A stretch of DNA of 64,000 nt from Haliotis cracherodii (GCF_022045235.1 NW_027266308.1:54064001-54128000), one strand, 5' to 3'. Shown: positions 16,553 to 62,719, counted from the first letter of the stretch. The notes: generated from the sequence alone by a model not told the origin. Numbers and translations: made by a program.

Positions 16553-19500
16553 TTAACTTGCAGCTCTAGAGATGATTTGTCTCTGAAAAATGAAAATGCC
16601 AATTTTAATAACAATTCGTTTCTTACTGAATAGTCTCAGAGATATAGCGCCACAAAACAAATTCTGTACACAATAAGTAAACACACAAGATGAGGCAAGC
16701 TCAACTAGCACTGTTCACATGGCATCATATTCACATACATTCTCCAAGAGTAAATACAAAAATCTGAATTGTTATTTTATTACCACCTACTGACCAGTTT
16801 TCACACAGAGAATTCATAAACCAGAAACAAAAGAACCTATGTATAGCTTAAAATTGATTAACCAGAGATGTTTGTTAAAATGCAAATTTGTATTTCCAAA
16901 TCTGCGACCCAGAAAAGCCTGACCTTGATGAAGTCTAACGTGTTGGTAGCATGCAGGCCCAGACTCCTCAGCACAACAATGGGTGTGAAGTCCACGCTGT
17001 ATAGCTTCTGTAGCCCATCAATAGCACCCATCACTGGCACCACGTGGCGCTGTCTCTCCGTCTCGTAGTCATGGAGATGGGTTAATGATCCTGGAAGAAA
17101 ATGGCATGGGAATCAGAGACCTTAACAACTAAATTTCACATCTCTAAGCAGTGGTAGACACACACGAGTGAAACAATGTTTGTCACACCCAGAGAAGGAA
17201 ATGGGATTAAAACATTGCTACATTGTAAACAGGCACCCCATGTACATCATCTTGATATATATTACATGTCTGTGAAGAGATCACTCGTTTAATAAAATTA
17301 CGTCCTACGACATTGTGACATGCTTGTAAACTTTGTGATGCAGGGTCCGATTCCACTAGGCGATTGTAGCACAACGACACTCATGAGTAAGTCTATGTAT
17401 ATGGAATTTACGGATAACCTTAGCACTGCGATGGCTTATGTGAAACGGAACCCTGAAGTCTGGCCATTGTATAGTATCAAATTAATATGCATCAACTTTT
17501 GACCTGTTTGGAGTATTATTATTCTGTTAAACTCAATTGGATTATGCTGTGGATCGCGTAGATGTCTGCCTATTCACACAGGACAGTGAAAACTCGCTCC
17601 CGTGTAATACCAATGTTATGAAACTCGTGAATAGTTCTGGTATCTGACTTGCTTTTTGCTCGTCAGATACCAGAACGATTCACTCGTTTCATAAAATTGG
17701 TATTACTCAGCTCATTCAATATTATATATATATATATATATATGAGACATTCTTTCAAAACTGTTTGTGATGATGTGATGAAGATTCTTAAAACAGTATT
17801 TAACTGAATCGACGACTGGTACAGCTATATCATGTACCTACCAAGATCACTACCGTTCTGTAGTGCTGCTGTCAGAGTCCCTGACAGACATGCTACATCT
17901 CCAAAGCCCAAGTTGACCCCTTGACCTGCCAGCGGATGGAGACGATGGGCAGCATCACTGAAACAATGATTAGTGATCTCCATTCAGTAAGCACCACACC
18001 CGAAACAAGGATTAGTAATCTCCATTCTGTAAGCACCACTACTGAAACAATGATTAGTGATCTCCATTCTGTAAGCACCACTACCGAAACAATGATTAGT
18101 GATGTCCATTCTGTAAGCACCACACCCGAAACAATGATTAGTGATGTCCATTCTGTAAGCACCACACCCGAAACAATGATTAGTGATCTCCATTCTGTAA
18201 GCACCACTACCGAAACAATGATAAGTGATGTCCATTCTGTAAGCACCACACCCGAAACAATGATTAGTGATCTCCATTCTGTAAGCACCACTACCGAAAC
18301 AATGATAAGTGATGTCCATTCTGTAAGCACCACACCCGAAACAATGATTAGTGATCTCCATTCTGTAAGCACCACTACCGAAACAATGATTAGTTATCTC
18401 CATTCTGTAAGCACCACTACCGAAACAATGATTAGTGATGTCCATTCTGTAAGCACCACTACCGAAACAATGATAAGTGATCTCCATTCTGAAAGCACAA
18501 CTACCGAAACATTAAGTGATCTTCATTCTGTAAGCACCACTACCGATATATAATGATTAGTGATGTCCATTCTGTAAGCACCACTACCGAAACAATGATA
18601 AGTGATCTCCATTCTGTAAGCACCACACCCGAAACAATGGTTAGTGATCTCCATTCTGTAAGCACCACTACCAAAACAATGATTAGTGATCTCCATTCTG
18701 TAAGCACCACTACCAAAACAATGATTAGTGATCATGTAAAATCTCAAAGCACCAGGCGAATCTTTGAGTCTCCACATTCACAAAAGGTCAATAAACATAA
18801 AAAAGTTCAAAGTAATCCTTGCAGTGTTGTGATGCAACAGTAGCTACTAATCTGAAGCCAGTGTCTAGAGAATTATGGTGTTCAGATTCAAATCTACTGA
18901 AAATTATGCTAATTGTCAAACTCCTAGTTTCAGGCGCTGGAGGCTGGTGTTGCACATGTGAACACTATTTTGGAAGGTAGACTTTTAATTAGGGCTGGCT
19001 ATTGATATAGATTACAGCAATCAGTAATCAACATATTTCATGCCACTCGTGAGCAGTGACACACTTATGCTATAAAACTTTGTGGACATTTGAGATATAA
19101 CAGTTGCTTTCCGCCTTCGACAATGGACATTATGGTCTGTAAATAATCAAGTCTGGACCAGACAATCCAGTGATGAGCATTGATCCACGCAATTGGGATA
19201 CTTTAGTCGCCCTTTACGACAAGCACAGTTGCTTTTTACAGCAAGCATGGGTTCTACCCTGGATCTTCATGGGTCGCTTCCTTCTTAACCAAATTTTAAT
19301 TCCACATCTCTAATAAAAGCAGTCTAATCAAATTCCACTTAAAAAAAAGATGAAGATGGTGATGTTACTTCCAAAAGAACAATGGTAGCAAATGGCCTTC
19401 ACACATTGTGCCCATGTAGGTAATCAAACCCGGGTCTTTGGCATGACAAGTAAACGCTTTAACCACAGGCTACCCCACCCCTCCTTTACACAATAGAATG

Positions 19501-22500
19501 GAAGTTCAATACACTAGATAATCAAACATGACACAAACATCATGTCTAGTTAATCACACATCCAGTACATGACTAACATTCTCACCCTATGAGGGCGACT
19601 CTGGGTCGCACATACGAGGAGGAGTGTATCAGCTGCAGTGGGAAGGCGCCACGACTGCCAGGCTCTATGTCCACCACTGTAGGAGGCAGCTGGCGGACTG
19701 TGTCTGGCCCTACACAGCAATAATACATGACTTATGTAAAAAAACGTGTAAATTTTTCTGAAATACAGATAACCTGAGAACATTACTATATTACCTTTAT
19801 AATAGTTAGCATTAGAATATCAGCCATACTTATGACACTACTTGTTGAGAAAAGGACATTTTTAACACTGATTAAACAAGAAAGGTGTTTGCATGACATG
19901 CAAAAGCAGACACAGCCCGATCTTCACCACAAAAAAGTAACTCATTCACACACATAACTTGAGTGTGTGAATGTGTTGGGTTTAACGCCGCTTTTAACAG
20001 TATTCCAGATATATCACGGCATGTCAGCTTAATGTGGGAGGAAAGCCCGAAGCGATGCAGGTCTCAGACATTTACCACTTCGGTGAAACCCACGAGCACG
20101 GGTATGGTGCTGACAAAACTAGAAACATAATCGGGGCGAACAAGTTCGAACCCACAATCATAGGTTTCTGGCTACTTAAGGGACACAACTCTGCACAGCG
20201 AATCGAGGCACCTTAGACGACGGGGCCACCCATGCCCCCTCACATAGCTTGAAAAAAAATAGAGGAATGAGAGTATTTTCTAACATGCCTGGCAAGATGT
20301 TCCTGACAACAGAACTGAAGACTTCCAGAGCTTTGTCCGCCAAAACATTCTTCTCTCGATCATTCCACTGTAATAAGATGCAATGTATTATCCATCTGGG
20401 ACCAGTATTTGTACCTTTTGTAACACAAGAAACTAATGTCTTGGAAAAAATTCAGATTACAGTTTAGTTTCTATACTTTTGTACGAGGAAATAGATGTCC
20501 ACCCCAAGTCAGGTATGAATCCTCCCAATTCCATTTGTAACATGACTCTTACATGATAACATTTGGTCTATGTTATCATTGGTAATCAAAAGGGCTGAGG
20601 TAAACGATGGAAGCCTGTTGAGAAATGTGTGCTTGTTGAGATTTTTTGTTTGCTGTTTAACACCATACTCAGTAATACTCCAGCAATATGACAGCAGTTC
20701 GTAAATAATTTAGCCTGGATGAGACACTCGAGTGATTTACATCATTTGCATGATCTAGGCAATTGGGATACGGCAAGATGCAGTAAGCCAAGTCATAGGG
20801 CTTGGCCTCCTGATCCTCATTGGTTATAATCGGTTGCTGGGGACCTATATTCTTAACTTGAATCTCCGTTGATGCCTGTTAAGAGATGGAGAACGTGTTG
20901 AGAGAAAGATATCCGGCTGCAGTTACATATCGGGTATAATAGTTTTGTTTTATCATCCACCATTCACTGTTCTCTCAACACTAGGGGTGAAACGATACAA
21001 CAAGGCCACGATAAAATATTATCATGATACATAGGTCATGATGATACGTATCATGATGCACATATTTACGTCAAATCATGTGGTTTTAGTTTGGTTTGTT
21101 GTTTTACACCGCATTTAGCAATATTCAAGCATATGACGGCAGTCTGTAAATAATCGAGTCTGGACCAGACAATCCAGTGATTTTCATCATGTACATCGAT
21201 CCACACAATTGGGATACGATGACATGCATCAACCAAGTCAGCGAGCCTGACCACCCGATCCCGTTAGTCGCCTTTTACGACAAGCATAGTCGCCTTTTAC
21301 GGCAAGCATGGGTTGCTGAAGACCTATTTTACCCCGGATCTTCATGGGACTCAAATCATGTGGAAACTTTTTGACTATTAATATTTCAGAGCTGGTTGCC
21401 AAGGAAAAGCTGGATGTAGACACATGTTCGTAGTAGCTCTTTTCAGTAATGAATTTAAAAAGCAACTGGTAATTACAACACAATTTGCAATATTTGACTG
21501 ACAAATACACTGGGATGGGGTCATCAAACGAGTAGTGAGTACTGTAATTTAGCTAGTGTATCATCTTGTATTGATACAGTAAAAAACATACTGTGTATCG
21601 TATCGTTACATGAAAACTCATGATGCACCGGTACACCGATGTATCGTTTCACCCCTACTTAACACCCTATCCATCCATGGCTTCATTCCACAAAACTTGT
21701 GTCACTTCAACTGTTGTAATTCATGCAAGTAGACTTCAGGTCTCTAAAGCTACTGAGGTGATGCTGACATCAAATGAACTCACAAAAGCATCATTCACTG
21801 CATCAACAAAGCTGTCCTCTGGTACGTTCAGCAGATGCTTGGCCGCCTCGTGCGTTGTGGACCACACCAGGGAACTAAGATTGTCTGTCAGCTGCAGAGA
21901 CATAAATTCTCCATTACTTTGTGCATATTGCATACTGTGTGAATGATCAGGGTACATAGTGAGATAGTCTCAAAATAGTGCTTGCCTTGAAAGTTACTAG
22001 CCACTTTCAAATTTCACAGCTTAAATATGCAACAGTTTATTTTCCAGAAATTTGAGTCAAATATTACGAAGCGGGGTTAACTCTGAGCTTGCAACCTCGA
22101 TTCCGTAAGGATATTAATTTGATGGTCGTATGGATCTACAGAAACGGAAAACTTTTTATATGTTGATCAACTAAGAGGTTTGCATAAAGAAATCCCCATT
22201 AAAATTTCAGTAGTCAGTTGGGCTAGAAACATTTCAGAACCATTTGCCCCACCGAGCGTTTGCTAGCCATGGGCAATTGGGCAGGTGGGCAGGTGGCTAT
22301 TTCACACACTGATAATGATAGGTCAATATTTACACTAAAAATACATTTAAATTGTACAAAACATATTTGTTACATATACCAATGTTTATACTTTAGTCTT
22401 AATATTGTACATACTGACCATAATGAAACAATCTTTTACAAATACAAATAAATAGAATTAAGTGCAAAACCAATAATTTTCCAAGGTATGTGGAAAATTA

Positions 22501-25500
22501 ATGGCCTTCCATGAATTCATTAAGGTTTATCCCAATCCAATAAAGTGTGGAATATAAACTAAATTGATTTTGATACGTTCCCATTTAACACTTCATTTGG
22601 CAAACATTCTGAACAATGCCACATAAAAAAAGAAACATACAAGGAGCAAGCTATCTTCATGAGTTAATTAAAAAGTACACGTGGCCAACACATTAGTACT
22701 TACTGGGAGCATTGCTATAGGACCAGTTGACAGGAACCGTTGCCAGGCAACACAGTTATCAGGTGCCTGCAACAGTCATTTCAGAATGTAACAATTGGTC
22801 AATATTTAAAAAAAACGCCTCTAATATTAAAAATATCTGTTGTTGAGTATGAACTTTGGTTTTTACAAGACTAAATTACAAAACGTTCCTTTTGAAATAG
22901 ATTGAGAGAGTAGTATGTGAGAGACCTCAGCTAGTTTGAGAGTTGCCACGATAGCTTTCTGTTTGTAGTCCCACGTGACCGTGTGGAAGTCGGCTGCTTG
23001 ACGGACTGCGGACTGGTTCCCATCAGCTCCAATCTGTTGGAAAACATACGATGTAGTCTCCCATGTCTGTTTGGTGATCATAACAACTTGTCTCCATACC
23101 ACCGATAACACATGACATGAGATAAGCAAATCAAAAAACATCCGAAATATCTTCAAACCAATACACACAAAACCAAATGTTCATATACTACTCAAAAGAT
23201 GTTAGGGATCACGATTCTTTCACATTACTATAGTTAATATGTCATGCCATGAAAAATTGCTACCAAATAACTAAACTGAACATGACTTGTATCAAGCCTC
23301 TCCGTCGGTCTAAGCAAAACAGGTCTCAAACTTGTGAACATCACCAGAATGCCAACAAAAACATCTTGATTGTGTAAATATTGTATCCTGAAATCTGGAA
23401 AGTTTTGTGAGCAGGAAAGTACTGCGAAACTGCGACTGATACACAATTGCAATAGCAATCTCATTAAAATCAGATCTTTGTTCTCGCTTCCGCTAAACAA
23501 AGATCTGAGAACATCCCATTACTGGTCATGTCAGGCCGACCTTGCGCGAGTTTTGACCGACCAATGGAATGACCAATCAGAAAGCAGCTTTCTCGTGCTT
23601 TACGGCACACATTTCAAATTGGGGACTACGCTTCGAAACATATTTTGACAAATTCTCGATTACAAATTTGAAACCTGACCAAAAAAACATTCCGGAATGG
23701 CTAATAGATGGTCTAGATTGTTAGGATTCGGTCGTTAAACCTGTAACTATCGTTCGGAATACACCATGTTAAACTTTTCGAGATTGCATGACTAGAAATC
23801 ACATTCCGACTGTCACTTTCATAATCTGGTAAGCGACGCACTGATTGGTCAGATGAAAGGTCGTTCTGACGTGACCCCCAACGGGATGTCTTCAGATCTT
23901 TGTTTAGCGGTAGCGAGAACTAAGGTCCGATTTTAATGAGATTGTCACAATAGTTTCATGACACAATTGTTTTAGCAGACCAATAACAAACAAAAGACAA
24001 TGGAGGCATATTTCCTTTTATTCACTTCCAAACATTGTCAACCAGGCAGTAAATGACTACACTGAGTAGTCAGACACACAACCACCTTTGTCAACTTCAA
24101 CATGCATCTATAGTTCAAAAATCACTATCTGACACTGAGTAACCATTTCCTCACACCAGTTCCTACTTTTAAGAAATAAGACAGGCAAACACAGTTTTGA
24201 TCTTCGTTATCCTTAATCGCAAAACTTTCCAGACTCTGTTAAGGCTATTGTTAGTCACTCGCAATAGATTCATGGCACAAAACATTCCACATTTACAGTA
24301 TCAAGACTAATACTTACGAGTAATCGTGTCCGTATGACATCTCCACTTTCCAGCTTCACGCCTACCAGTGGATGTTGCTTGGAAGAGAAATCTTTCACCC
24401 CAGGCAGCTCGTACGCCTTTGGTTTTGTTCTATAGCGGATCTCTACACGATCACCAACCTCAGACAACCTCTGCATCAGAGCCGCCAGGATGATGTCATT
24501 CTCAACAATGTAAGCCAGTGGTTCTGCCATATCTTCATTGTTGAATGTGATCATGGAGTCCGAGCAGGACTCCCAAACCTAGGGAGAGGAAAAGTATCAA
24601 CTGTTTGTTTTCCATCCAGTCATCATGGTCACATTGTAAGCAAACTGATCACCCGATAAGCCAAAATAAAAAGTTTTGTTTGTTTGTTTGTTGATTAATG
24701 CCGCACTCAGCAACATTCTAGCTATATGACAGCAGTCTGTAAATAATCGAGTCTGGACCAGACAATCCAGTGATTGAAATCATGAGCATCGATCTACGCA
24801 ATTGGGATACGATGACATGCATAAACCAAGTCAGCGAGTCTGACCACCCGATCATGTTAGTCGTCTCTTATGACAAGCATGGTTGCCTTTTACGGCAAGT
24901 ATTGGTTGCTGAAGACCTATTCTACCCCGGATCTCCACGGTTCAGAATAAAAAGTAACATTATTTTCTTCCATCCCTCTCTAGGTGTGGTGTTGTTAGTG
25001 GTATGTTTTCAAAGACATGCTGTTCTTATCCAGCCATGTTCATCATCATAAATACAGTGTACTGTAATGTGATGGTACAGATTATGAGAACATTGGTCTT
25101 TAGTGATGTATACAGGTGTAAATGGCCTTGTTAACATTTTTTAAGCCTTAACGAACCTGCATCCTCCTGACTGGTTGACATCTCATCTGTAGAATTTCAT
25201 CCCAACCACCGAAACCTGGAAGAAATACCAATAAATGAAGATAATCACACCTGTGAATCTGTAAATTTCTTTCAGCAAAGTAATGACACATGAAAGTGAA
25301 TACTTGTAATATGTTGACTGTACAATAAACTCATTAGAGGGAGTACTGTCTGTTAAACTTAGAATGCTGGCACTTTGTGATGTACATACTGTATATACAT
25401 TATAGTCAATGTGTAAAATGATATTTTACATATTGACTAGAAATTTGTTGATTTATTTCATAATGCAGATTTTTGCATTAAATTGTATATTAATATAACA

Positions 25501-26992
25501 ATCCTATCTCACACTATGCCTTTTTTCCTTCTTCTTTCGATCCTCATGTGGAAACATGCTTGAACAAAGTTTCAAGCTTCTAAAAACATTTCACCTGAAA
25601 AAAACATCCTAGCATCACCATGGTCACCACACAAACAAATGGGTCATCCCAAAAAAGATCCCAAAACAGAGATCTTAAGAGTGTCAACCTGTAGACGTGT
25701 AATGTCGAACCCTTGAATATTGATCCTTTGATGAACTATGCCCCGATTATTTCATAATGTTCCGTTCCCATCCTCTTCTTCAATTAGAGTCCACAGATGG
25801 TGATTAGAAGGAGAATGATGTGGCAGGGGTAATCAGGTGATAAATCATGAAAGGTCACATGCACGGGATATAGTGCGTAACCCATTTGTTTCCATATAAG
25901 GATCAAAAGAAGAAGTAAGAAGTGAGATAGGATAAGTTCAAAAACATATTTTTCTCAAATGATCGTCTCCTGCAAATCCCTAACATAGTTGGTAGTGGCA
26001 TGACATAAACCAGTGTTTAATATTGAACACTGTAACCAAACTATTCTTTTGCTCTCAATGTAGATAAAAACATCAGCTTAAAAGTTGCCATCCTTTTGAG
26101 ACTTACTGTTAAAGAAATTGACAGTTGCTGGACTTAAAGCACACGTCCTGTTGCTGTATTTCTCCTGAAGAATAAACTTTCCTTTGTCTGGGGCTGCTTC
26201 CAGGAGGATTACTTTCTTGTCAGAGAACAATGGGTTGGTGGCTACAACAAATACAACTTTAGTCTTGTCAAGATTCTCAATGGCAAACCACTCTCAAACC
26301 TACCAGTAATCTACTTCTTATCAAACTCATTTCATGCACTTTGTATATAGTAAATGAATAGAGCTTCAGATTTATGTGAATATTTTTGGGTCCGGTGAGT
26401 GAATCTGTAAGTTCAATCTATTGCTTGTTTTCTAAACCAAAATAAAATGAAAACATTAGGTGCTGTTTTCATCCTCGCAATAGTGGCCATTTTGGCTGGG
26501 TAGATGTTCGGTTTTCGCCATTTGGTGAAGTTTTTGCTTGGTGATATTTTGCTGAGGTGCTGCTTTAGCTATAACCCCAAAAGTAGTATTGAAAATGCCC
26601 TTAAATTGCCTCTGAAAAAGTAGTCTGTTCATGAGCAACCCATCCCAACACAACTACCCTAACGATCGAAGGGGCATGCGAAATCAGGGTCACAGCCGGA
26701 TCCATTAACGCTATAGAGTTGTTCTCTGCAATATAACTAACTTGGAACTCTATAAACTAGAATTACAACTTCAGTCAATTGCAAGGTGAACTTCACTCAA
26801 CACACCCAATGCGCAAGCCATTGCTGCTCCAACCATACCACCTCCGGATATGACAATATCTGACGTTTCTTCATTGTTATCTAAGAGACGTGTACTGGTG
26901 CTGAATGTTCTCCGAATCCGTGTAATAGCACTGTAGGAGCGAGACCTTGGAAGTATCCTTATCAATGTTGAGGACAATGCTGAGGTAACCAT
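16553..26992 (-). CDS. COQ6: Ubiquinone biosynthesis monooxygenase COQ6, mitochondrial (12 coding exons, ~478 aa)
   Basis: Exons 26992-26806, 26241-26107, 25215-25157, 24578-24318, 23033-22926, 22766-22704, 21891-21784, 20367-20289 (GC donor), 19709-19586, 17957-17842, 17090-16924 and 16582-16553 join in phase (1437 nt). The product has an Arg/Ser-rich transit peptide, FAD-binding [33 protein letters not shown] and [26 protein letters not shown]. Confidence 0.96.
17341..17455. mobile_element. Short MITE-like element; related copies at ~30181-30281 and ~30795-30900
   Basis: Inverted ends cagggtccgattccac / gtgaaacggaaccctg. The 30181 copy has arms ccacaaagcgatc / gatcgctttgtgg. Confidence 0.5.
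17603..17705. repeat. Imperfect ~100-bp palindrome (hairpin), probably from a non-autonomous DNA element
   Basis: gtaataccaatgttatgaaactcgtgaatagttctggtatctgac pairs with gtcagataccagaacgattcactcgtttcataaaattggtattac around a 13-nt loop. Confidence 0.8.
17951..18734. repeat. 42-bp minisatellite (~18.5 copies) in COQ6 intron 9, overlapping the exon-10 acceptor
   Basis: Unit AGCACCACTACCGAAACAATGATTAGTGATCTCCATTCTGTA; 14-aa periodicity in the overlapping ORFs. Confidence 0.97.
19963..20240 (-). mobile_element. tRNA(Leu/Ser-like)-headed SINE, family C; second degraded copy at ~48132-48370
   Basis: The minus strand starts GGGGGCATGGGTGGCCCCGTCGTCTAAGG (A-box-like) and contains GGGTTCGAAC (B-box). 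Tail AAAAGCGGCGTTAAACCC. Near-perfect TSD cacata(a/g)cttga at 19951-19962 and 20241-20252. Confidence 0.75.
20982..21657. mobile_element. hAT-type MITE with a nested SINE
   Basis: 18-bp TIR TAGGGGTGAAACGATACA / TGTATCGTTTCACCCCTA, Ac-like terminus. 8-bp TSD ctcaacac / cttaacac. Confidence 0.85.
21084..21350 (-). mobile_element. Non-autonomous retroposon family A (no tRNA head), full-length copy
   Basis: 13-bp TSD tcaaatcatgtgg at 21071-21083 and 21351-21363; (AAAC)n-like tail. Other copies: ~13975-14030(+), 19130-19275(-), 20645-20870(-), 24675-24943(-), 29378-29570(+), 37598-37777(+), 50072-50716(+, interrupted), 51470-51741(-), 53840-54088(-), 54760-54945(-), 59712-59890(+), 63598-63850(+). 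Confidence 0.9.
23456..23944. mobile_element. MITE with ~60-90 bp TIRs; truncated copy at ~32668-32953
   Basis: caatctcattaaaatcagatctttgttctcgcttccgctaaacaaagatctg is mirrored by cagatctttgtttagcggtagcgagaactaaggtccgattttaatgagattg. Both flanks contain caatag, a possible degenerate 9-bp TSD. Confidence 0.85.
24675..24943 (-). mobile_element. Family A retroposon, full-length
   Basis: High similarity to 21084-21350; TSD aataaaaagt at 24665-24674 and 24946-24955. Confidence 0.88.
25500..25937. mobile_element. Inverted-repeat element family ending in ACTTATCCTATCTCAC; related copies at 49530-49810 and ~51430-51926
   Basis: Termini atcctatctcac / gtgagataggataagt and shared internal sequence (caaacaaatgggtca, aatgatgtggca) in three places. 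Confidence 0.7.
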
Positions 26993-27226
26993 ACTGACTT
27001 TGATATTTGGAGTAACCTCCCCTTGTTGACATCAGTTTCGCACTTACGTCTTGTTATATTTATATGAAATTAAATATTTTTATAGTATTATTTTCAGTTT
27101 AGACTAGTAATGATTAGATTAAAATATTAAAATGTGAATAATATTAGCAATTAAAAAGATGCAAATTTGCTGCGGGTCAACATAGCTCGTTTGCATAGTT
27201 CAGTTTAACATGGCAACAATGGCAAC
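26993..27226. promoter_or_regulatory. Bidirectional promoter between COQ6 and FAM161, with an imperfect RFX X-box-like motif
   Basis: The start codons diverge and are only 217 bp apart. GTTTAACATGGCAAC lies at 27203-27217, followed by a second ATGGCAAC half-site. Confidence 0.65.
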
Positions 27227-36819: not shown

Positions 36820-36919
36820 CACAGGGCCACGGATAGCCATACTATCACTGACTGTACTGATTACATTAAAAAATGCAATCAGTACAGTCAGTAATAGTAT
36901 GGCTATCCGTGGCCCTGTG
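36820..36919. mobile_element. 100-bp fully palindromic MITE with 8-bp TSD
   Basis: CACAGGGCCACGGATAGCCATACTAT... is mirrored by ...ATAGTATGGCTATCCGTGGCCCTGTG. Exact TSD ATATGTAT at 36812-36819 and 36920-36927. Confidence 0.92.
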
Positions 36920-52100: not shown

Positions 52101-53349
52101 AGACCTCCTGAGAGGTTTACATTTGAATTATAAGACCTGCTTGGAGTTTTTACATCAGAACATGGGTGCTGAAGACCAATTCTAACCCAGATCTACATGA
52201 AAATTCAATGACATGAATCAGACCTGCAACCTCACATATCATGTTTACTATTGTAACCTACTGTTTTCCAACTGAGCCACAGGGGTAGTGATGAAAGGGT
52301 GTTCAATCTTACATCATGACTTCAGTTGATTGCAGGCTGCACATTGTCTTTCTCTCTCGCTGTCATCAAATTGATTGTTTAAAGTAGTATTTCACTATAA
52401 GGTATCCCAATGTTTTCTTATTATTTCTGGTATTTCTTGCATTTAGACTGATCATAAGTTAATTCGAACACTCCTCCTTGGCTTTCATTGAAAATGTGAA
52501 ACCTATGTCTTTTCCTTTGCTCAAGATTTTACATTTTCAACCAAAACTCCACAGTCATGTTTTAATTATAACTTAGACGCTACGACATTGATTGGCTTAA
52601 TAGATTATGATGTGATCTTCTATGAAGGGTTTGTCAGTGGAGGTATCCTATGTGAGTAACAGATTTGATACGAATGAGACCATCTTGTAGGGCTTGTATA
52701 GAGGACCTATCCTTGCATCCTAAACAGGGAGCAGCAATTACAAACAATATCACTGCATGATTTCTAACTAAAATAATTGTTTGAACTCATTACCTGAGGC
52801 TTTAGATTTTCCCTGACGATGACCTGTTTGTTCTTCATCTTCACATGAGCTCTGAAGACTGGTAAAAGTATCCCCCTCATCCTTGACCTTTGACTGTAGT
52901 GCCATCTCTTCCTCTCCAAGTTGCTGAGCAATATGCTCCTGAGTCTGTGCAATGAGATTAGCCTGAGCCATTGCCTGGATGTTCTGCAAGTCACCAGATA
53001 GACGCAGAAATGCTGGGGATGAGTTTTCCAGCATAACATTTGCTTCCATAGCCCCTTTGCCATGGTTATTTGACAAGACAAGGACCGGCGTGATGGTGCT
53101 GAGGACCTTCTGCTGGTTGGCACTGCTGCTCAGGTACACGACAGGCTGGCTGTTGTCCACGGACGTTGTCTGGTGTCCTGTTGCGCTACCAAGATACACA
53201 TATGATGCCTGTGGTAAGATAGACTGTGCAGTGTTAAGAGAGGCAGTTGTCTGGGGATGAAGAGCATTGACTGTTGCAGTAACTGTCAGAACATCCATCT
53301 TGCCAGGTGCTAGTTCCTCTCCTGATGGAGAGTCTACTGTCTCATCCAT
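43151..53349 (-). CDS. ZNF410: C2H2 zinc-finger transcription factor, ZNF410 orthologue (7 coding exons, ~606 aa)
   Basis: Exons 53349-52794, 49336-49150, 48768-48593, 47746-47657, 45344-45078, 44207-44082 and 43569-43151 join in phase (1821 nt). Finger helices [33 protein letters not shown] and [11 protein letters not shown] match the five fingers of vertebrate ZNF410 as I recall them. The first coding exon has an acceptor at 53547-53548, implying an upstream non-coding exon. Confidence 0.92.
45978..46148 (-). mobile_element. tRNA(Asp-like)-headed SINE, family B, young intact copy; others at ~19385-19480(-), 54283-54450(-), 55145-55308(+)
   Basis: The minus strand reads GGGGCCGTCGGG-TAGCCTAGTGG (A box)...GCTCGTCACGC...GGTTCGATTCC (B box). 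Tail AAAAGCGGCGTAAAACCAA(ACTC)n. Exact 13-bp TSD tctgagggaaagt at 45965-45977 and 46149-46161. Confidence 0.93.
46632..46919. repeat. Direct tandem duplication, 151-bp period
   Basis: aaagcaaaccctgtgccccg...gcatacattag starts at 46632 and again at 46783. Confidence 0.95.
50251..50648. mobile_element. Tigger/pogo-like DNA element remnant splitting a family A retroposon at a TA
   Basis: Right end cgagggaccactg + TA. Family A sequence stops at ~50250 and resumes at 50649 (tatttacagactgcc). Confidence 0.65.
51470..51741 (-). mobile_element. Family A retroposon, full-length, nested in an ACTTATCC-family element
   Basis: Near-consensus copy with a (CCAA)n tail; the host repeat continues on both sides. 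Confidence 0.88.
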
Positions 53350-55877: not shown

Positions 55878-57499
55878 CTCTCTCATGTATGTAATTGTTG
55901 TAACTTTTAATCATCCACCTACCATATATATTCTGTACCATGTTCATGTTTTAGTCTTGCTTGACAACAGTATAAGGATCTACACATAAACATCACTATT
56001 ACAGTAAAATAAAGAATTTGCTATCCATAAATTTGTGTCATCCATCAATTTCTAAGAAATGCCTATCAAACAAGTCATCTATTTCATCACTGATGAAAAT
56101 ATGGATGGACCCATAAGCATTGTTATTTTACAAATGTGGAAGCTTCTAACAGGCAACACTGTATCAGCATGACTCTACTAAATTACATCCACAACATGAC
56201 TTTTACATCAGGCGTCATTAGTCATAATTATTTCAAGTACCAATGAAACCATCAAATAATCCCCTATAATAACACTCGCTATCCTATGGCAACCAATATA
56301 TTATGTAAATCAGAACTATTATAGATACTTTATGAGATAATAACATACGGAACCACATAATTAATCCAGAATTCATTGGAACAACTGTTGATACAAATCC
56401 AGGTTTAGAACAACTAATATCCCATTTGGGAGAATATGGCTATTTTCTTAATTCCTAAACACCACAAAATTGCTGACCATACTACATATATGTAGATTAC
56501 AGGGAGTGAGATTACAATTTTGAGATAAACCTTGAGTGCTTTTTAAATATATAACTATAAAGGCACATGTGTACATGCCACTGCTCACATAAACACTTCA
56601 CCTTTGAACTTAAATGATAAATATATATGCATGTTTTATAGACCTGTTTGAACTGTCAGTTATTTTCAATGTATTTAATACTGTATTCATTACAAAGCCA
56701 AATTTAAAATACTAACTTAAAAATATTTACATACACCAAAGACTACATAGATATATGAATATACGTCTTTGAATACACCTATAAACATAAACGGTGCCTA
56801 TGAGGTTGTTTATTCGTCCACAAATTGAATACCACAAATGGCTCAATATCAGCTGTGTTTGGTAAGCATTTGTAAGATATCAATCATACCGCTGAACACG
56901 TTTTTTCTGATTAGATCTACATGACTTCTGTTGTTTACCTATAGTTAATAGTTCTTATGAATGATCTGCTTCCAACTGCATTAAACCGGCTAGAAACCAT
57001 CATTCGTGGGTTGTTTCGTGAAACACTGACATTGCTCTATTGAAGGTCGGTGGAATTTTCCATCAGACTTCGTTAACATTTTTAACCATCAATGGCAAAA
57101 TGACGACATAAACCCTCAAACAACAAGAAACGATAGCGCCTAAAATGTAATTTAGGCCGACGTTTGAACCATTTCGTCGAAACGGACTATCCTTTTTTCC
57201 ACACGATATGTGTTATCAAACAAAACAGTTTTGACCACTGATAATCAACGCGGAAATAAATGAAATATTATGGGTTGTAATCTTACTCTTCGCACTTTCC
57301 ATCCTACCTTCATTGCGTAAGAATACAGTTACCAGTCAATGAAAAGTACCAAATCAGTTTTGCAGCTACCGTGGAAACATAGAGAGAGTTTTAAAAGGTT
57401 AGAATCATGATAGTGTGGATACCATGTAACGTTTTATCCTCTTAATACAAATACTCATGCAGAACTATTTAAAAATTGGGTCATCTTCTGAAAGAAGTT

Positions 57500-58260
57500 C
57501 CAATCACTTCCTACACATCGATGGCGTTTGTTAAAACGATACCGATTGGCCAAAGGAACAAAATTTTCCCAAAACACATGTGAATGTTGCATATATTTAT
57601 GAATGTAAACAATCATATCTGTACTTGGAAATACAAATTTGTCAACATTAGAGTGGTTGCGTACTTATTGTGTTACCAGTCGCAAACTAAACTGTCAATG
57701 GAACCGTTTTGATATTTTGTTGACGACATCATGAAACAACCAATCAGAATACACCTTACTTTCTTTCAGAATGACGGAATTACCCGAAGAATTAATATGT
57801 ATATCAAGTTATTCTTTTAAGAGTTTGATTTCAGATAGAAACGTGCATTTGACAATATGTGAACACGAGAACATATATTATATCAGTTATATCAATATTG
57901 TTTATGAAATGTAATAGTTCAACCTATACGGAAAGACACGAGTAAAAGCGGATATGGTGAACATCTACCAGTTTCAACCGGTTTACAACTTTGGGAGTTT
58001 TCATAGCACAGAAGACTGGTACGGGTTCGACAAACTGTTAAGGTATATACCACGAATGATATAGGTAAAGGACTTTGGTTTGGGGTTAATGTGCATGCTA
58101 AAAGGTAAGAGTAACGTTGTGAAAATTGTCTACACGCCGGCATGGAGGCCGCCATTTTAAAACATGTAAACAACGGAAGTGGGATTCAAAGTCATAGGCA
58201 ACCACGATTGTATGTCATGTGATCTCGGTGCATTACGCGCCCTTTTTGTATGGTGATTGC
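57500..58260. promoter_or_regulatory. Probable divergent promoter region for ZNF410 and XPO1
   Basis: Locally CpG-rich. YY1 motif GCCGCCATTTT (~58148-58158), ETS motif CGGAAGTG (~58174-58181) and CCAAT boxes (~57545, ~57739), lying between the two divergent genes. TSSs not determinable. Confidence 0.55.
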
Positions 58261-59249
58261 TTACCATGGAGAATGTAGTTACTTCTTAACATGAATGTGT
58301 AAATTATTTAGAGAGCAACAGCAAAAAATAACCTTGCGATTGATAAATGTAGTAGCCTTTGTCCGATAATTGCGTGATGTTGAAAAGTCAGCTGTTTCTA
58401 CGAATGCTTTTCGACTCGTGTTCATTGTTAGATGGTGTGTGTTTTTTGTCGGTTAAACATCAAGACACTGTCAAGTCACATCTCAATAAATACAAATTTA
58501 CGAGGTGTTAAGTCTAGAATGTTATGTGTTAAGGTATTATCCTGACTTTGCTGCGAACTGTGGGCTGACACAGCAGTGTCAGAAAATTTTGTTCCTTTCC
58601 ACACACGTGTTCGGAACGCAAAGAAGATTAGGCCCAATATGACAATTTGACAGGGTATGTTGGACCATTAGGTGGTCATTAGTTACTGTTTTTACAGATA
58701 GATCTGTATCCAGACATGCTGTATGGCAATTATTATCAAGCTTGTGCTAACTAGCGATCAATAGCTTTAGAAAATCTCAATGCGTCTTCAGCTGAGCAAG
58801 GCTTGTATTTTCATGTATCTGTAGAAGTTAACCCGAAATGTTTTGCTAACTCAAATAGCTACTAGTAGTGTGTATACCTTAACATTACCAAAAATACAGT
58901 CATCTTGTAGACAATTCATCATTCGCAAGTCACACACGGCATCTTTATCAACGGACCGCATTCCATAGGAGGGATTATTATCATGCAAAATTATAATGAC
59001 GTTGCAGTATCCATCAAACCCTACATCTATTTTTTCAGTCATGTTACTGTTCAAATGTTAGGCAAATGAATAAGAGGTTGGTTGGACTACCAACATTGAA
59101 TACAATTCCAATTTGGAATGATTTATCATGTTTATAAAGTGCTAAGTTTGCTAACAAGGTGTTACTCTTTTTGCAGGTTAATTCACCTTTTCCCGCCGTA
59201 GTTGGGTAGCCCAGATTTAGTGAGAGTCGATGTAACCAAGCCTGTCCAG

Positions 59250-62200
59250 ATGGTCATGAGCACCTTGACTGAACAGGCAGCCAAGTTGCTCGACTTCAAT
59301 CAGAAGCTCGACATACAGCTGCTTGACAATGTTGTTGCCTGCATGTATGCAGGGGATGGTCCCCAGGTAGATATGATTTCCTGTTGATTGTAGTTTTGAA
59401 TCCAAGCCTTTCAGCCAAGAACAGATATTGTTACAAAGGTATCATTGATCCTGGGTTGTGGAAACATACACTTGTCCGTTCACAGGTGAACCTGTCAAAA
59501 TCTTCAGTCAGTAGTTGAAGGCTACTGCTCACAAATTTTACAGACATATGTGTCATATGGGTTTGATGTTTCATTTTAGTTTCCAGAGCATTTACTCACC
59601 AAATGATTTCCGGTGTATTATATTCTAATACGAGAAGTATGCTTTACTCAACGCAACCATACATTCGTTTCTGTGGTGACATAACCATCTTCATCTCTCT
59701 TTTTACCATCTCACCTGTGAAGATCCGAGGTAGAGGCTCGCTGACTTAGTTGAAGCATGTCATCAGATCCCAATTGCATAGATTAATGCTCATGATGTCA
59801 GTCACTGGATTGTCTGGTCCAGACGCGATTATTTACAGGCCGCCGTCATGTAGCTGGAATATTGCTGAATGTTGGGTTAAACAGCAAACATCACCAACTT
59901 AGCACAGAATTTCTCTTGCTTAAAAGGGTGGCGTATATAGTTATACCAAGGAATTCCGTCTGTCATGCCGAGGACATTTTTCTGTTAGACTTATAACTCA
60001 AGAACTACCATATAGATTCTTTTCAAACTTGGTGAACACTTTTTATAACTATTGGAGAGATGCAGTGCAAAATTTGATTTCAACTTTTGGATTTTCTATA
60101 AAAAAATACAGCTTTTTTCATTCTCTTCCTTAAACATTTGTGTGACCTATAATTTTAAGACTACTGCATGGATTCTTTTCAATTCATATTTAGTGAACAG
60201 TTTCCTTACTAATGGAAGAGATGGAGTGCCAAGTTTGATTTTGATGTGTGTATTTTCTGGTGAGAAAAAAATCATGTTATGAACTTAGAATGTATTTGAC
60301 TTCAACATTTGTACCCTATTTTCTTCTGAAGCAACAGCAGATGGCACAGAAGGTTCTTACAGAGCTGAAAGAGCATCCAGATGCCTGGACAAGGGTAGAC
60401 ACAATATTGGAGTTTTCCAGTAACCAACAGACCAAATACTATGCTCTTCAGATCCTGGAGAATGTTATCAAAACCAGATGGAAGGTCCTACCTCGTCCAC
60501 AGTGTGAAGGTTTGTAAATTGTTTTGTACTTGATTCTGCATGGAATTCTTTTCACACTGTAAAAAGTAATTAAAATGGTGTTTTTGGTATTTTTGTTCAT
60601 GTTGGTGAGATTGTTCGCTCCTTGTTAGTAAGTTCTCATTCCCTTTTCAGGCATCAAGAAATATATCGTTGGACTTATCATTAAGACTTCATCAGAGAGT
60701 TCATCTTTGGAGAGGGAAAAGGTTTACCTTGGAAAACTTAACATGATTCTAGTCCAGGTAATGGTTTACAAGAATTTAATTTTCTGCTTAGGGCAGTTTA
60801 ATTCCAATTTCAATTAAATGAGATTTTTTCCCTCGGATACAACTATCTCTGCATGAAGAGCTGACAGAGGTCACATGACATGTAAGGTAAACCCTGGAAA
60901 TTTGATTCAGTTTTCTAGATCTATTAGGCTTAATTCTTTTATGTCCTTTTTCCGAAATAAAAATCTTAACAAAAGAAAACCTACACAATATAAATATACC
61001 TTAGTACACACTGTTTCAGGAGTAGATGCCATGGTGACCTGAAACAACAGGGTGTATAATATTCAATTTCTAATTGGAACTGCCTGTTATTGTACATTGC
61101 AATATGCAGGTACCAAATTTTCTGTTCATGTTTGTTCACTTGTGTCAAGAATTTAGAAGTCTTGACACTGATTGCAATGGAGGGTTTTTGTCAGATCTTC
61201 ATGGAGAGGTGCATCGGAGTAAAAGAACCTTCTTTTTTTTACATCAGATTGGTTTTAATTCATATTTACTTGCATTAAATGCATGGTTTAGCAGATGCTG
61301 TTAGTGGTGGTTCACTTGTCATTCAAATGAAGAGTATTAAGCTAATATCTGTGTATGTAGATTTCCCATCATCACACTACTTGGGGACGTCCACTCTCAT
61401 CTACAGGGTTACCAAAACAAATTTATGCACTAGAATTTAGAGGTGTAACAAGCTGACTCCTTCAGAAACATAGTAGACAAGCCCCTGTAAGAGTTGAATA
61501 TATATATTATATGCAATGACCAAATATAACACATCAGTGTGTAGTCAACAAGCAATATTCTTTTACTTATAAGACTTCTGTACTGTAGCAGTAGATGAAC
61601 AATATGTCAGTTCAACCAAGTTTTACTGAATGTTCTGTAGCATCCATGAGTTCCAAAGGGGATTTCACGCCTCTATTTACATTTAGCTAGTTCCTCAGTG
61701 TATATGACCGGGACGGCAGTTGTTAGACCCTGGATGCGCTCAGAGACTGTTCAGGAATCTGGATGTGGTCTGGTCTACTGCTGGGTGGTTGTGTGTAGTC
61801 AGGTTTCTAACAAATTTGACAACTGTTGTACATTTACCAGACAACCTGTATCTACACATCTCCAGTGGACACATGCCAGTCTCGTACTATTTAATCTGTA
61901 TCTAAAGCCATTTAGAATGTCCTGTCTTCCTCTTCATTGGGCTGTGCATTCTCCCAAATTGTGAATAGATAGAGCACTTCTTTGTCTTCAGTTACAGTAA
62001 TAACGACACATCTCAACAAATGCCAGCCAGACTTTTCATGTCCCAAAGTGTTCCTATCAAGATCAGTGTTAGAAATTGGCACTAGTCCTGTAGTCCTTGC
62101 CAAACTGCCCAATGGTTAAGGTATCATAAGGACTAGTAGAAATTTTCCATTTTTAAGGGTTTTGCTATATGTTATCATTATTAGGACTAGTGAACTAACA

Positions 62201-62719
62201 ATGTTCGTTTCTACCGCTGAAGATAATATATGCATGATAAGAACGATAAAGATACTTACAATATTGTTTTTGTCTTTTCAGATTCTCAAATATGAATGGC
62301 CACGAAACTGGCCATCATTTATCAGTGATATTGTTGGTGCAAGTAAGACAAATGAGTCTCTTTGTCAGAACAACATGACCATATTGAAATTATTAAGGCA
62401 AGTGAAGAGGAGCTATTTGCAATACTAATTATGTCTGAAATAATTTTACCATGAACATTTTTTTATCAGCACTTTTATTTGCTAAAAAATCTTTTATTTT
62501 ACACATTGTTTCTGGAGATGTTCATGTAAATCGTCAAGTATTGTCACTAGTAAGAGCTTGAAAGTAGGTGACTGTATTAACAAGTTTCTTTATCTTTGCT
62601 TCAGTGAGGAAGTGTTTGACTTCTCAAGTGGGCAAATGACACAGGCCAAAGCTAAACATTTGAAAGATACCATGTGTAGTGAATTCTCACAAATCTTCCA
62701 GCTCTGTCAATTTGTAATG
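59250..62719 (+). CDS. XPO1: Exportin-1 (CRM1), 5' partial; first five coding exons, gene continues beyond the window
   Basis: Exons 59250-59366, 60332-60509 (acceptor could be 60338), 60651-60757, 62282-62397 (GC donor) and 62605-62719. They encode [73 protein letters not shown] and [24 protein letters not shown]. Confidence 0.97.

What the first reader, a model, noticed from the sequence alone, without database searches (positions are those of the whole stretch)
16553..62719. COQ6-FAM161-ZNF410-XPO1: an apparently ancestral bilaterian block that vertebrates split between two paralogons
Seen: <-COQ6 | FAM161-> <-ZNF410 | XPO1->. Established (human gene order, from memory): 14q24.3 has ZNF410-> <-FAM161B | COQ6->, with the same head-to-head and tail-to-tail geometry. 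2p15 has FAM161A upstream of XPO1 on the same strand. Inference: this window keeps the intact pre-whole-genome-duplication cluster, and reciprocal gene loss produced the two human loci. The block is two divergent pairs, so shared bidirectional promoters could be the constraint.
Basis: partly seen in the sequence, partly recalled or inferred. Interest (0 to 1): 0.8.

Follow-up and report, generated by a model that had tools for sequence, protein, structure and literature searches.

The report
Ancient COQ6-FAM161-ZNF410-XPO1 gene neighbourhood in abalone
In black abalone four unrelated genes (COQ6, FAM161, ZNF410, XPO1) lie side by side in the order and orientation that humans keep in two halves on chromosomes 14 and 2, a clear but unsurprising case of gene order kept since early animals.

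Summary
The window (Haliotis cracherodii, contig C45) carries <-COQ6 | FAM161-> <-ZNF410-like | XPO1->. Each identity was tested exon by exon.

- The zinc-finger gene is a reciprocal best match of vertebrate ZNF410 and matches it finger by finger.
- FAM161 is single-copy. In a maximum-likelihood tree, vertebrate FAM161A and FAM161B form one clade (97/90) that excludes the abalone gene. An AU test rejects orthology to FAM161A alone (p 0.0003).
- Both divergent pairs have close 5' ends: 217 bp between the COQ6 and FAM161 start codons, and about 0.8-1.0 kb between the ZNF410 and XPO1 5'UTR exons.
- Metagenome contigs show parts of the block elsewhere: COQ6|FAM161 head-to-head in two bivalves, and FAM161-> <-ZNF410 in three annelid-like contigs.
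- FAM161->XPO1 also occurs 385 bp apart in a demosponge contig (Aplysina aerophoba metagenome), so that linkage may predate Bilateria. One anthozoan contig lacks all three partners within 10 kb.

The ancestral-block and reciprocal-loss reading is supported. Shared promoters explain only two of the three junctions.

The parts
16553..26992 (-). COQ6 (ubiquinone biosynthesis monooxygenase) coding region. Exon pieces lie within 26774-27031 (ATG at 26992, [17 protein letters not shown] motif), 26081-26293, 24273-24578, 22866-23180, 21739-21969, 17828-17983 and 16861-17112, with a last exon ending at the stop codon 16553-16555.
   Evidence: all seven pieces have TIGR01989 COQ6 as top match, collinear over profile positions 2-433 of 437 (about 304 bits summed). 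FAD_binding_3. The exon or exons covering profile positions 270-339 were not located.
26993..27209 (.). COQ6|FAM161 divergent promoter interval, 217 bp between the two start codons.
   Evidence: Read directly from the sequence. The same layout, with COQ6 exon 1 about 200-270 bp upstream on the opposite strand, occurs in bivalve contigs L001 and L003. In human the annotated ranges overlap by 481 bp.
27210..34009 (+). FAM161 (centriole/cilium protein), single copy and co-orthologue of vertebrate FAM161A and FAM161B. Exons at 27210 to about 28904, about 30022-30105, about 30487-30660, about 31699-31794 and 33803-34006, plus the stop codon.
   Evidence: PF10595 at 4e-59. P0001 is 100% identical; exon mapping; only locus in the genome; tree and AU test.
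34010..43150 (.). Tail-to-tail spacer between the FAM161 and ZNF410 stop codons, about 9.1 kb.
   Evidence: The equivalent gap in the annelid-like contigs is about 1.2-1.9 kb to the last matched ZNF exon. Human: about 0.7 kb.
43151..53349 (-). ZNF410-like coding region. The N-terminal exon lies within 52771-53355 (ATG at 53349). An extra finger plus ZF1 lie in 49149-49385, ZF2-3 in 48576-48830, ZF4 in 47649-47774 and ZF5 in 45220-45384. The C-terminal exon lies within 43154-43651 (stop codon at 43151-43153).
   Evidence: exons align to 6wmi chain residues 3-32, 33-95, 94-126 and 117-152; no close paralogue; reciprocal best match with frog ZNF410 fragment P0339, 65% identity over ZF2-3.
56939..57290 (-). 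ZNF410-like 5'UTR exon, spliced to 53546. The intron 53547-56938 has GT..AG on the - strand.
   Evidence: contigs from three runs begin exactly at 56939 and end at 57138-57292, and mRNA-length contigs end at or jump from 53546; splice dinucleotides.
57291..58096 (.). ZNF410|XPO1 divergent promoter interval, about 0.8-1.0 kb between the outermost contig ends of the two 5'UTR exons.
   Evidence: Assembled contigs cannot fix true transcription starts. One run has extra pieces at 57308-58040, so the gap may be smaller.
58097..62719 (+). 5' part of XPO1 (exportin-1/CRM1). The 5'UTR exon lies at about 58097/58226-58653 with donor GTATGT, and exon 2 starts at about 59202 with ATG at 59250. Further exons lie within 60245-60514, 60632-60814, 62120-62425 and 62486-62719. 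The gene continues about 23 kb beyond the window.
   Evidence: exon translations. IBN_N; human Exportin-1, E 1.6e-29. CRM1_C exons at C45:54140725-54151000, the only locus; a 5.5-kb contig ends at 58653.

Best explanation
The window holds a four-gene conserved ancestral microsyntenic block, <-COQ6 | FAM161-> <-ZNF410 | XPO1->. [quoted passage not shown] After the vertebrate whole-genome duplications the two copies lost complementary genes. One copy kept ZNF410-FAM161B-COQ6 (human 14q24.3) and the other kept FAM161A-XPO1 (human 2p15). FAM161 is the only gene retained in duplicate. The FAM161->XPO1 adjacency is probably older still, because a demosponge contig has it without ZNF410 in between. 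ZNF410 would then have been added between the two genes before the bilaterian ancestor, or lost in that sponge. How the block is held together is inferred, not shown. The two 5'-5' junctions are compact divergent promoter regions, where a breakpoint would damage one or both genes. The 3'-3' junction is probably kept by short distance, slow rearrangement, or regulatory elements of one gene lying inside its neighbour. Duplication relaxes the promoter constraint, because each promoter copy can lose one partner and still serve the other. That is what happened to ZNF410|XPO1.
For: Gene identities.

ZNF410 orthology:
- Collinear fingers and recognition helices match 6wmi.
- The best intra-genome paralogue of the ZF2-3 exon scores only 65.9 bits at 47% identity, against 192 bits for self.
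- The forward best hit is frog ZNF410 fragment P0339 (one 90-residue stretch, 196 bits, on human ZNF410).
- P0339's best hit in the 1.18-Gb genome is this exon (84.7 bits, 67% identity).

FAM161:
- Single locus in the genome.
- Vertebrate FAM161A, FAM161B and lamprey form one clade (97/90), and Haliotis nests inside molluscs (100/98).
- The AU test rejects a clade of FAM161A plus spiralians (delta lnL 59, p 0.0003).
- FAM161A and FAM161B names were checked.

Human order:
- PTGR2, ZNF410, FAM161B, COQ6 are contiguous in hg19, and FAM161B and COQ6 overlap by 481 bp.
- The 2p15 order is USP34, XPO1, FAM161A, CCT4.

Other animals:
- Bivalve contigs L001 and L003 have COQ6 exon 1 head-to-head with FAM161.
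- Annelid-like contigs L002, L007 and L008 have a collinear ZNF410 gene tail-to-tail with FAM161.
- Demosponge contig L032 has the FAM161 stop at 1647 and the XPO1 ATG at 2032 on the same strand.

Promoter geometry.

Wider neighbourhood: abalone CCT4, the neighbour of human FAM161A, lies about 204 kb beyond XPO1. The only Aha1 gene is on the same chromosome.
Against: - No deuterostome invertebrate could be examined, so the ancestral state rests on spiralians, vertebrates and one sponge contig.
- The anthozoan 30-kb contig L029 has cornichon, not COQ6, head-to-head with FAM161, and no ZNF410 or XPO1 within 10 kb.
- COQ6 exon 1 was not found within 350-780 bp upstream of FAM161 in L002, L004, L007 or L008.
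- The ZNF410|XPO1 junction itself is seen only in abalone.
- USP34 is not next to abalone XPO1 (the single DUF3517 locus found is on another contig), and CCT4 is in a different position and orientation than in human.
- Human strand orientations rest on memory.
- No expression or promoter-function data were obtained. The sequencing runs used are only guessed to be RNA, and assembled contigs cannot show transcript ends.
Confidence: 0.8

Rival explanations
1. The block is ancestral but is kept neutrally. Spiralian genomes such as abalone rearrange slowly and the intergenic gaps are small, so few breakpoints fall in them. Shared promoters are a by-product, not the reason for retention.
For: The 3'-3' FAM161/ZNF410 junction has no shared promoter, yet it is the junction seen in the most lineages: abalone, three annelid-like contigs and human. 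The COQ6|FAM161 pair is absent from the anthozoan contig and was not seen in the annelid-like contigs. The ZNF410|XPO1 pair was dissolved in both vertebrate copies.
Against: COQ6|FAM161 keeps an extremely tight 5'-5' layout in abalone, two bivalves and human (217 bp, about 200-270 bp, and overlapping ranges). Published surveys find conserved pairs enriched for 5'-5' orientation and gaps under 1 kb (PMC3514665). FAM161->XPO1 survives from sponge to human.
Confidence: 0.3
2. The zinc-finger gene is not a ZNF410 orthologue but an unrelated C2H2 gene that happens to sit there. In that case only COQ6-FAM161 and FAM161...XPO1 would be shared with human.
For: Summed PDB scores rank multi-finger proteins (ZNF568, Aart, YY1) above ZNF410 for three of the four finger exons. 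The reciprocal hit leads by only about 3 bits (84.7 against 81.4). The human ZNF410 motif is not clustered at the abalone CHD3/4/5 gene.
Against: The higher ranks come from adding many weak per-finger matches, none above 51 bits. Each exon's best ZNF410 stretch is collinear with ZF1 to ZF5. The helices agree closely with human: [10 protein letters not shown] is identical, and QRLKVH, SSL(K/R)KH, SQSGSR.VHM and PAHFKYH are nearly so. Identity to the frog fragment is 65-67%, against 60% or less for any other abalone locus. The same gene sits in the same place in the annelid-like contigs.
Confidence: 0.04
3. The resemblance is convergent. The adjacencies arose independently in molluscs and vertebrates by chance rearrangement.
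For: No deuterostome invertebrate was examined, and one cnidarian contig lacks the block.
Against: Three junctions are shared with identical relative orientation. Parts of the block recur in bivalve, annelid-like and sponge contigs. Chance expectation is about 1e-4 per junction (inference).
Confidence: 0.02
4. The ancestral order was FAM161->XPO1 with no gene between, as in the sponge. ZNF410 then landed next to FAM161 independently in spiralians and in the vertebrate 14q copy.
For: Demosponge contig L032 has only 385 bp between FAM161 and XPO1. Human 2p15 has no ZNF410 between them.
Against: This needs two independent insertions of the same gene, in the same tail-to-tail orientation, immediately 3' of FAM161. 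One insertion before the bilaterian ancestor followed by one loss on 2p15 is simpler.
Confidence: 0.05

Closest known systems
Conserved ancestral microsyntenic pairs (CAMPs; Irimia et al. 2012, PMC3514665)
   Same: Unrelated genes have stayed adjacent across more than 600 million years. They are enriched in 5'-5' orientation with very short gaps, and some are split between vertebrate paralogons after the genome duplications.
   Different: This is a chain of four genes with three junctions, not a pair. I could not check whether any of these pairs is already in the published list: no supplement was held, and the supplements of PMC8851819 do not name these genes. No paper in the library pairs 'microsynteny' with FAM161.
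HSPD1-HSPE1 bidirectional pair
   Same: A mitochondrial gene sits head-to-head with a neighbour across less than 1 kb, conserved from non-bilaterians to human (quoted).
   Different: HSPD1 and HSPE1 act in one complex, so co-regulation has an obvious purpose. COQ6 (ubiquinone synthesis) and FAM161 (centriole/cilium) have no known shared function, and co-expression was not tested here.
Human 14q24.3 (PTGR2-ZNF410-FAM161B-COQ6-ENTPD5) and 2p15 (USP34-XPO1-FAM161A-CCT4)
   Same: The orthologues have the same order, and from memory the same relative orientation. CCT4 is also nearby in abalone.
   Different: In abalone all four genes lie in one 45-kb stretch. PTGR2 was not looked for. USP34 is not adjacent (the one locus with its DUF3517 domain is on another contig). 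An ENTPD-family gene lies 0.7 Mb away, and CCT4 lies on the other side and on the opposite strand.
Vertebrate ZNF410, the single-target activator of CHD4
   Same: The abalone gene has five collinear fingers with near-identical base-contacting helices.
   Different: The literature describes ZNF410 conservation only among vertebrates (PMC9976917). The abalone gene carries an extra N-terminal finger-like unit. There is no cluster of the human motif CATCCCATAATA within 80 kb around the abalone CHD3/4/5 gene.

Membership tests
COQ6 (TIGR01989 equivalog) | Collinear match to the COQ6 model, better than to bacterial UbiH/UbiF models, with an N-terminal FAD-binding GxGxxG | tested here: met
   all seven exon pieces have COQ6 as top family, covering profile positions 2-433 of 437. 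GGGMVG lies in exon 1.
COQ6 (TIGR01989 equivalog) | Whole-protein score above the curated cut-off (489 bits) | not testable with these tools
The pieces sum to about 304 bits, and the exon or exons for profile positions 270-339 were not located.
FAM161 (PF10595) | Pfam FAM161A_B domain above the gathering score | tested here: met
   200.9 bits against a cut-off of 29.9; single genomic locus.
Co-orthologue of vertebrate FAM161A and FAM161B (2R ohnologues) | Vertebrate A and B form one clade that excludes the invertebrate genes | tested here: met
   A, B and lamprey form one clade at 97/90; the AU test rejects A plus spiralians (p 0.0003). A long-branch priapulid attaches beside the vertebrate clade and is treated as an artefact.
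Co-orthologue of vertebrate FAM161A and FAM161B (2R ohnologues) | The two copies lie in paralogous chromosome regions that share other duplicate pairs | not tested
   The 2p15 and 14q24.3 positions come. The wider 2p/14q paralogy (OTX1/2, SIX, AHSA1/2) is from memory. The ohnologue-list supplement held no entry. The single abalone Aha1 gene is on the same chromosome.
ZNF410 orthologue | Five C2H2 fingers collinear with human ZF1-5, with matching recognition helices | tested here: met
   exons align to chain residues 3-32, 33-95, 94-126 and 117-152; 65% identity to frog ZF2-3.
ZNF410 orthologue | Reciprocal best match | tested here: met
   Forward: top hit P0339, shown to be frog ZNF410. Reverse: top hit is this exon. 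The margin in bits is small because the gene is split into exons, but the margin in identity is clear. The forward search covered only proteins of 47-149 residues.
ZNF410 orthologue | Clusters of the ZNF410 box at the CHD4 orthologue | tested here: not met
   no exact motif and one site with one mismatch in 80 kb around the CHD3/4/5 gene, which is background density. This feature defines the vertebrate regulatory circuit, not gene orthology.
XPO1/CRM1 | IBN_N and CRM1_C domains and best match to exportin-1 | tested here: met
   IBN_N at 6e-12. CRM1_C exons downstream on the same strand, the only locus; every listed hit is exportin-1/CRM1, with human first at 1.6e-29.
Conserved ancestral microsyntenic block | The same adjacency of orthologous, unrelated genes in several deeply diverged lineages | tested here: met
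   Seen in abalone (the window), bivalves, annelid-like contigs and a demosponge, and in human.
Bidirectional promoter pair | Divergent transcription starts less than 1 kb apart | tested here: met
   COQ6|FAM161: the start codons are 217 bp apart, so the starts must lie within that interval or overlap.
Bidirectional promoter pair | Divergent transcription starts less than 1 kb apart (ZNF410|XPO1) | tested here: inconclusive
   the contig ends of the two 5'UTR exons lie about 0.8-1.0 kb apart, but contigs cannot show true starts and the runs are only guessed to be RNA.
Bidirectional promoter pair | Co-regulation from the shared interval | not tested
   No expression levels or reporter data were available.

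The most novel reading that the evidence does not exclude
The FAM161->XPO1 adjacency dates back to the last common ancestor of sponges and bilaterians and is under selection. ZNF410, described so far only as a vertebrate factor devoted to CHD4, would then be an ancient bilaterian gene born or inserted inside this linkage. Its DNA-reading residues were already fixed, but its CHD4 box clusters are a later vertebrate invention, so its original target is unknown.
Probability: 0.3. Interest if true: 0.55.

Novelty: new member of a known kind. Interest (0 to 1): 0.4.

Why it matters
This is a compact, easily checked example of how whole-genome duplication resolves a tight gene cluster by complementary loss. 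It could serve as a marker block for reconstructing the ancestral linkage group behind human 2p and 14q.

It extends ZNF410, of clinical interest as a fetal-haemoglobin repressor acting through CHD4, to molluscs and annelid-like animals with nearly unchanged DNA-contacting helices. That opens the question of what ZNF410 regulated before the vertebrate CHD4 motif clusters existed.

It also gives a candidate sponge-to-human linkage (FAM161-XPO1) and a very tight COQ6/FAM161 divergent promoter for functional study. None of this overturns current views, since hundreds of such conserved pairs are already catalogued.

Tried and rejected
- **Neighbour look-ups:** Gene order in amphioxus, echinoderms, hemichordates, Nematostella, gar and others could therefore not be read.
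- **PDB ranking by summed score:** this was misleading for zinc-finger exons because multi-finger proteins add up many weak matches. I used best-stretch collinearity and the frog fragment instead.
- **USP34 next to XPO1:** the only DUF3517 locus found is on contig C67, so this extension was rejected.
- **Otx on the same chromosome:** the TF_Otx family gave no match anywhere, which is uninformative.
- **ENTPD5 next to COQ6:** a GDA1_CD39 gene lies 0.7 Mb away on C45. Its subfamily was not resolved, so it does not count as support.
- **ZNF410 boxes at abalone CHD4:** not found. The one cluster of the motif in the part of the match list that was printed (100 of 216 matches), at C3:33.879 Mb, is a 42-bp minisatellite and was judged chance.
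- **Literature:** no paper links FAM161 with microsynteny. The supplements of Irimia 2012 were not held. The supplements of Robert 2022 and Singh 2015 do not name these genes. The source of the JAAUYG, JAAUXT and JAAUXV contigs was not found.
- **Long GC-rich ORFs at 4-13 kb:** these are satellite arrays, not genes.
- **Spliced models:** All window genes were searched exon by exon.

Full report
**What the window is.** A 585-residue open exon at 27210-28964 is 100% identical to 'protein FAM161A-like [Haliotis cracherodii]' (P0001). The window is contig C45:54064001-54128000 of a 1.18-Gb assembly. It is an intron-rich animal locus, so every gene was analysed exon by exon on stop-free pieces. I made no joined or spliced protein model. 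Where a full-length protein was needed (the FAM161 tree) I used database protein P0001.

**Gene identities.**
- *COQ6, - strand.* Seven exon pieces between 16861 and 27031 each have NCBIfam TIGR01989 'COQ6' as their best family. They are collinear over profile positions 2-433 of 437. Exon 1 begins at ATG 26992 and carries [14 protein letters not shown].
- *FAM161, + strand.* It matches Pfam FAM161A_B at 4e-59. Mapping of P0001 gives five exons, 27210-34006. It is the only locus in the genome.
- *XPO1, + strand.* Exon 60245-60514 matches human Exportin-1 residues 42-102 at E 1.6e-29 and Pfam IBN_N. The CRM1_C exons lie at C45:54140725-54151000 on the same strand and nowhere else. Only the 5' fifth of the gene is in the window.
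- *Zinc-finger gene, - strand, coding sequence 43151-53349.* It has an N-terminal exon, four finger exons and a C-terminal exon.

**Is the zinc-finger gene ZNF410?** The ZF1 exon's best match in the PDB is human ZNF410 (6wmi, 4e-19, against 8e-12 for the next hit), with the unusual PAHFKYH helix.

The best ZNF410 stretch of each exon is collinear with the human fingers:

| Abalone exon | 6wmi chain residues |
|---|---|
| ZF1 | 3-32 |
| ZF2-3 | 33-95 |
| ZF4 | 94-126 |
| ZF5 | 117-152 |

Summed scores put ZNF568, Aart or YY1 higher for three of the four finger exons. Those totals come from many weak per-finger matches, each 51 bits or less.

Inside the abalone genome the next-best match to the ZF2-3 exon scores 65.9 bits at 47% identity, against 192 bits for self. 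There is therefore no close paralogue.

In the 5.8-billion-protein search, limited to proteins of 47-149 residues, the top hit is a bullfrog fragment, P0339. P0339 aligns to human ZNF410 in one 90-residue stretch of 196 bits. It is 65% identical to the abalone exon, with [10 protein letters not shown] fully conserved. Searched back against the whole abalone genome, P0339's best hit is this same exon (84.7 bits, 67% identity; the others are at most 81 bits and 60% identity).

I take orthology as established to about 95%.

**FAM161 tree.** A search of 1.84 billion representative proteins gave 834 relatives. Cluster look-ups named the vertebrate FAM161A and FAM161B groups, a lamprey gene, and priapulid, acoel, sponge, cnidarian and placozoan genes.

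In a careful IQ-TREE analysis (39 rows, 662 columns, LG+C20+F+G4), vertebrate A, B and lamprey form one clade (ultrafast bootstrap 97, SH-aLRT 90). The abalone gene nests inside molluscs (100/98) and Spiralia (98/97).

Forcing FAM161A together with the spiralian genes costs 59 log-likelihood units and is rejected (p-AU 0.0003).

The abalone gene is thus co-orthologous to both human genes, as the reciprocal-loss model requires. Rows left out of the careful tree were the unnamed environmental sequences and redundant species. A long-branch priapulid sits next to the vertebrate clade, which I regard as an artefact.

**Human arrangement.** In hg19, PTGR2 spans 74,318,533-74,352,168, ZNF410 spans 74,353,317-74,398,991, FAM161B spans 74,399,694-74,417,117 and COQ6 spans 74,416,636-74,429,813 (PMC5845532). 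ZNF410 and FAM161B are therefore 0.7 kb apart, and FAM161B and COQ6 overlap by 481 bp. The 2p15 gene list runs USP34, XPO1, FAM161A, CCT4, COMMD1 (PMC5426703). GWAS papers on pig, cattle and turkey name the 14q genes together; I did not open those papers.

**Promoter geometry in abalone.** The COQ6 ATG (26992) and the FAM161 ATG (27210) are 217 bp apart.

For the other pair I laid assembled contigs from four runs, guessed to be RNA, on 53301-59300.
- mRNA-length contigs (0.8-2.9 kb) end or jump at 53546. Contigs from three runs begin exactly at 56939 and run to 57138-57292.
- The interval 53547-56938 has GT..AG on the - strand. The ZNF gene therefore has a 5'UTR exon at 56939 to about 57290.
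- A 5.5-kb contig and others end at 58653 (donor GTATGT) and begin at 58097-58226. This is the XPO1 5'UTR exon, spliced to about 59202, with the ATG at 59250.
- The two 5' ends are therefore about 0.8-1.0 kb apart and divergent.
- Contigs cannot prove transcript starts or strand. The splice signals give the strand.

**Other animals.** I then searched the 41 loci with the window's exon pieces and placed their FAM161 genes on trees.

| Contigs | Likely source | What is seen |
|---|---|---|
| L001, L003 | Heterodont bivalves (L001 is 72% identical to Mya; L003 lies inside the Mercenaria/Mya/Dreissena clade) | COQ6 exon 1, with presequence and D(V/I)[18 protein letters not shown], on the opposite strand about 200-270 bp upstream of the FAM161 ATG |
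| L002, L007, L008 | Annelid-like (clade whose only named member is Paralvinella) | A ZNF410 gene tail-to-tail downstream of FAM161. In L007 and L008 the extra finger, ZF1-5 and a C-terminal motif ([12 protein letters not shown]..., DFDHEEIA) lie in collinear exons. L002 shows ZF4 and ZF5 only. Identity to frog ZNF410 is 65-67% |
| L032 (MKWU01045931.1) | Demosponge, from the Aplysina aerophoba sponge metagenome (PMC5649159) | FAM161 stop codon at 1647, then on the same strand at 2032 an ATG exon, MNGQFTLQQAEQLLNFEAKLDVGLLDAVVHCFYDSLGEE, followed by GT. All 33 PDB hits with E of 1 or less are exportin-1, at its N-terminus |
| L029 | Anthozoan (30-kb contig) | Cornichon head-to-head with FAM161, a ROK kinase beyond it, and no COQ6, ZNF410 or XPO1 within 10 kb |
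| L004 | Echinoderm-like | Too short to tell |

The FAM161 gene of L032 falls in a large unnamed clade on the sponge side of the tree, with Sycon and Corticium (SH-aLRT 96).

In L002, L004, L007 and L008, no COQ6 exon 1 was found in the 350-780 bp available upstream.

**Wider neighbourhood.** A CCT gene at C45:54354905-54362978 (- strand) is CCT4: 104 bits to subunit delta, against 48 bits or less to the other subunits. It lies about 204 kb beyond the XPO1 3' end. In human, CCT4 is the immediate neighbour of FAM161A. The only Aha1_N gene is also on C45, at 28.4 Mb. An ENTPD-family gene lies 0.7 Mb upstream. USP34 is not adjacent.

**Reading.** Both ZNF410 (human 14q) and XPO1 (human 2p, and the sponge) lie 3' of FAM161, and ZNF410 is immediately tail-to-tail with FAM161 in abalone, the annelid-like contigs and human. 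The abalone order FAM161-ZNF410-XPO1 is therefore the most parsimonious pre-duplication state, and complementary loss explains the two human loci.

The sponge contig suggests FAM161->XPO1 is older than Bilateria, with ZNF410 added later or lost in that sponge.

The bidirectional-promoter idea fits the two 5'-5' junctions and agrees with the known enrichment of conserved pairs for 5'-5' orientation and gaps under 1 kb (PMC3514665). It cannot explain the 3'-3' junction. Neutral retention remains a live alternative for the 'why'.

**Side test.** The abalone and human ZNF410 recognition helices are nearly identical, so I looked for the human motif CATCCCATAATA (bioRxiv 10.1101/2020.08.31.274324).
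- The genome has 216 exact sites, against 113 for the reversed control.
- There is no exact site, and only one site with one mismatch, in 80 kb around the CHD3/4/5 gene at C14:3.489 Mb.
- The one cluster among the 100 matches that were printed, on C3, is a 42-bp minisatellite.

The vertebrate CHD4 box clusters are therefore not evident in abalone. The literature describes ZNF410 and its boxes as conserved 'among vertebrates' (PMC9976917).

**Verdict.** It is a new member of a known kind of feature. No paper in the library mentions it, but I could not inspect the published pair lists. Interest is moderate.

Noticed in passing
window 4514-9588 and 9828-13123: Two large G+C-rich satellite arrays with units of 27 bp (about 189 copies) and 29 bp (about 97 copies). 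They lie downstream of COQ6 and create long spurious ORFs on both strands.
   Followed up: partly
window 17960-18733: A 42-bp minisatellite (18.5 copies, 91% matches) lies inside a COQ6 intron just upstream of the exon at 17828-17983. I confirmed only the array itself.
   Followed up: partly
window 53839-54088 and about ten or more other copies or fragments (e.g. 21086-21336, 24678-24929, 51476-51724, 63613-63833): A roughly 250-bp interspersed, SINE-like element at 82-88% identity is scattered through the introns of COQ6, ZNF410 and XPO1. It gives enormous summed contig depth in all four sequencing runs. Its translation (..[27 protein letters not shown]..) recurs in the ORF lists.
   Followed up: partly
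window 49149-49385 (- strand); L007 6723-6929; L008 6694-6888: The abalone and annelid-like ZNF410 genes carry an additional finger-like unit (Y.C...CGKTFAS..F...H) just N-terminal to ZF1, on the same exon. I did not check whether vertebrate ZNF410 keeps a remnant.
   Followed up: no
window 43154-43651 (- strand); L007 4584-4841; L008 5054-5200: There is a conserved non-finger C-terminal motif, G(M/A)NVVVLSQP(Q/E)E... and D(L/F)DHEEIA, in mollusc and annelid-like ZNF410. It may correspond to the ordered C-terminal domain described for human ZNF410 and would be an independent orthology marker.
   Followed up: no
G000:C45:54354905-54362978 (locus L042): CCT4 (TRiC subunit delta), the neighbour of human FAM161A, lies about 204 kb beyond the XPO1 3' end on the - strand. 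One of its introns holds a long tandem array (L042 about 6330-7400).
   Followed up: partly
G000:C3:33879141-33879929 (locus L051 4141-4929): A 42-bp-unit minisatellite carries nine copies, all in one orientation, of the human ZNF410 motif with at most one mismatch. I judged it chance, but it is the only cluster among the 100 of 216 exact motif matches that the tool printed.
   Followed up: partly
locus L029 6107-7481 (- strand) and 1470-2492 (+ strand): In an anthozoan contig the head-to-head partner of FAM161 is a cornichon-family gene, and a bacterial-type ROK sugar kinase ORF without introns lies upstream.
   Followed up: partly
G000 genome-wide: The human ZNF410 motif CATCCCATAATA occurs 216 times, against 113 for its reversed control. 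This roughly twofold excess is unexplained.
   Followed up: no
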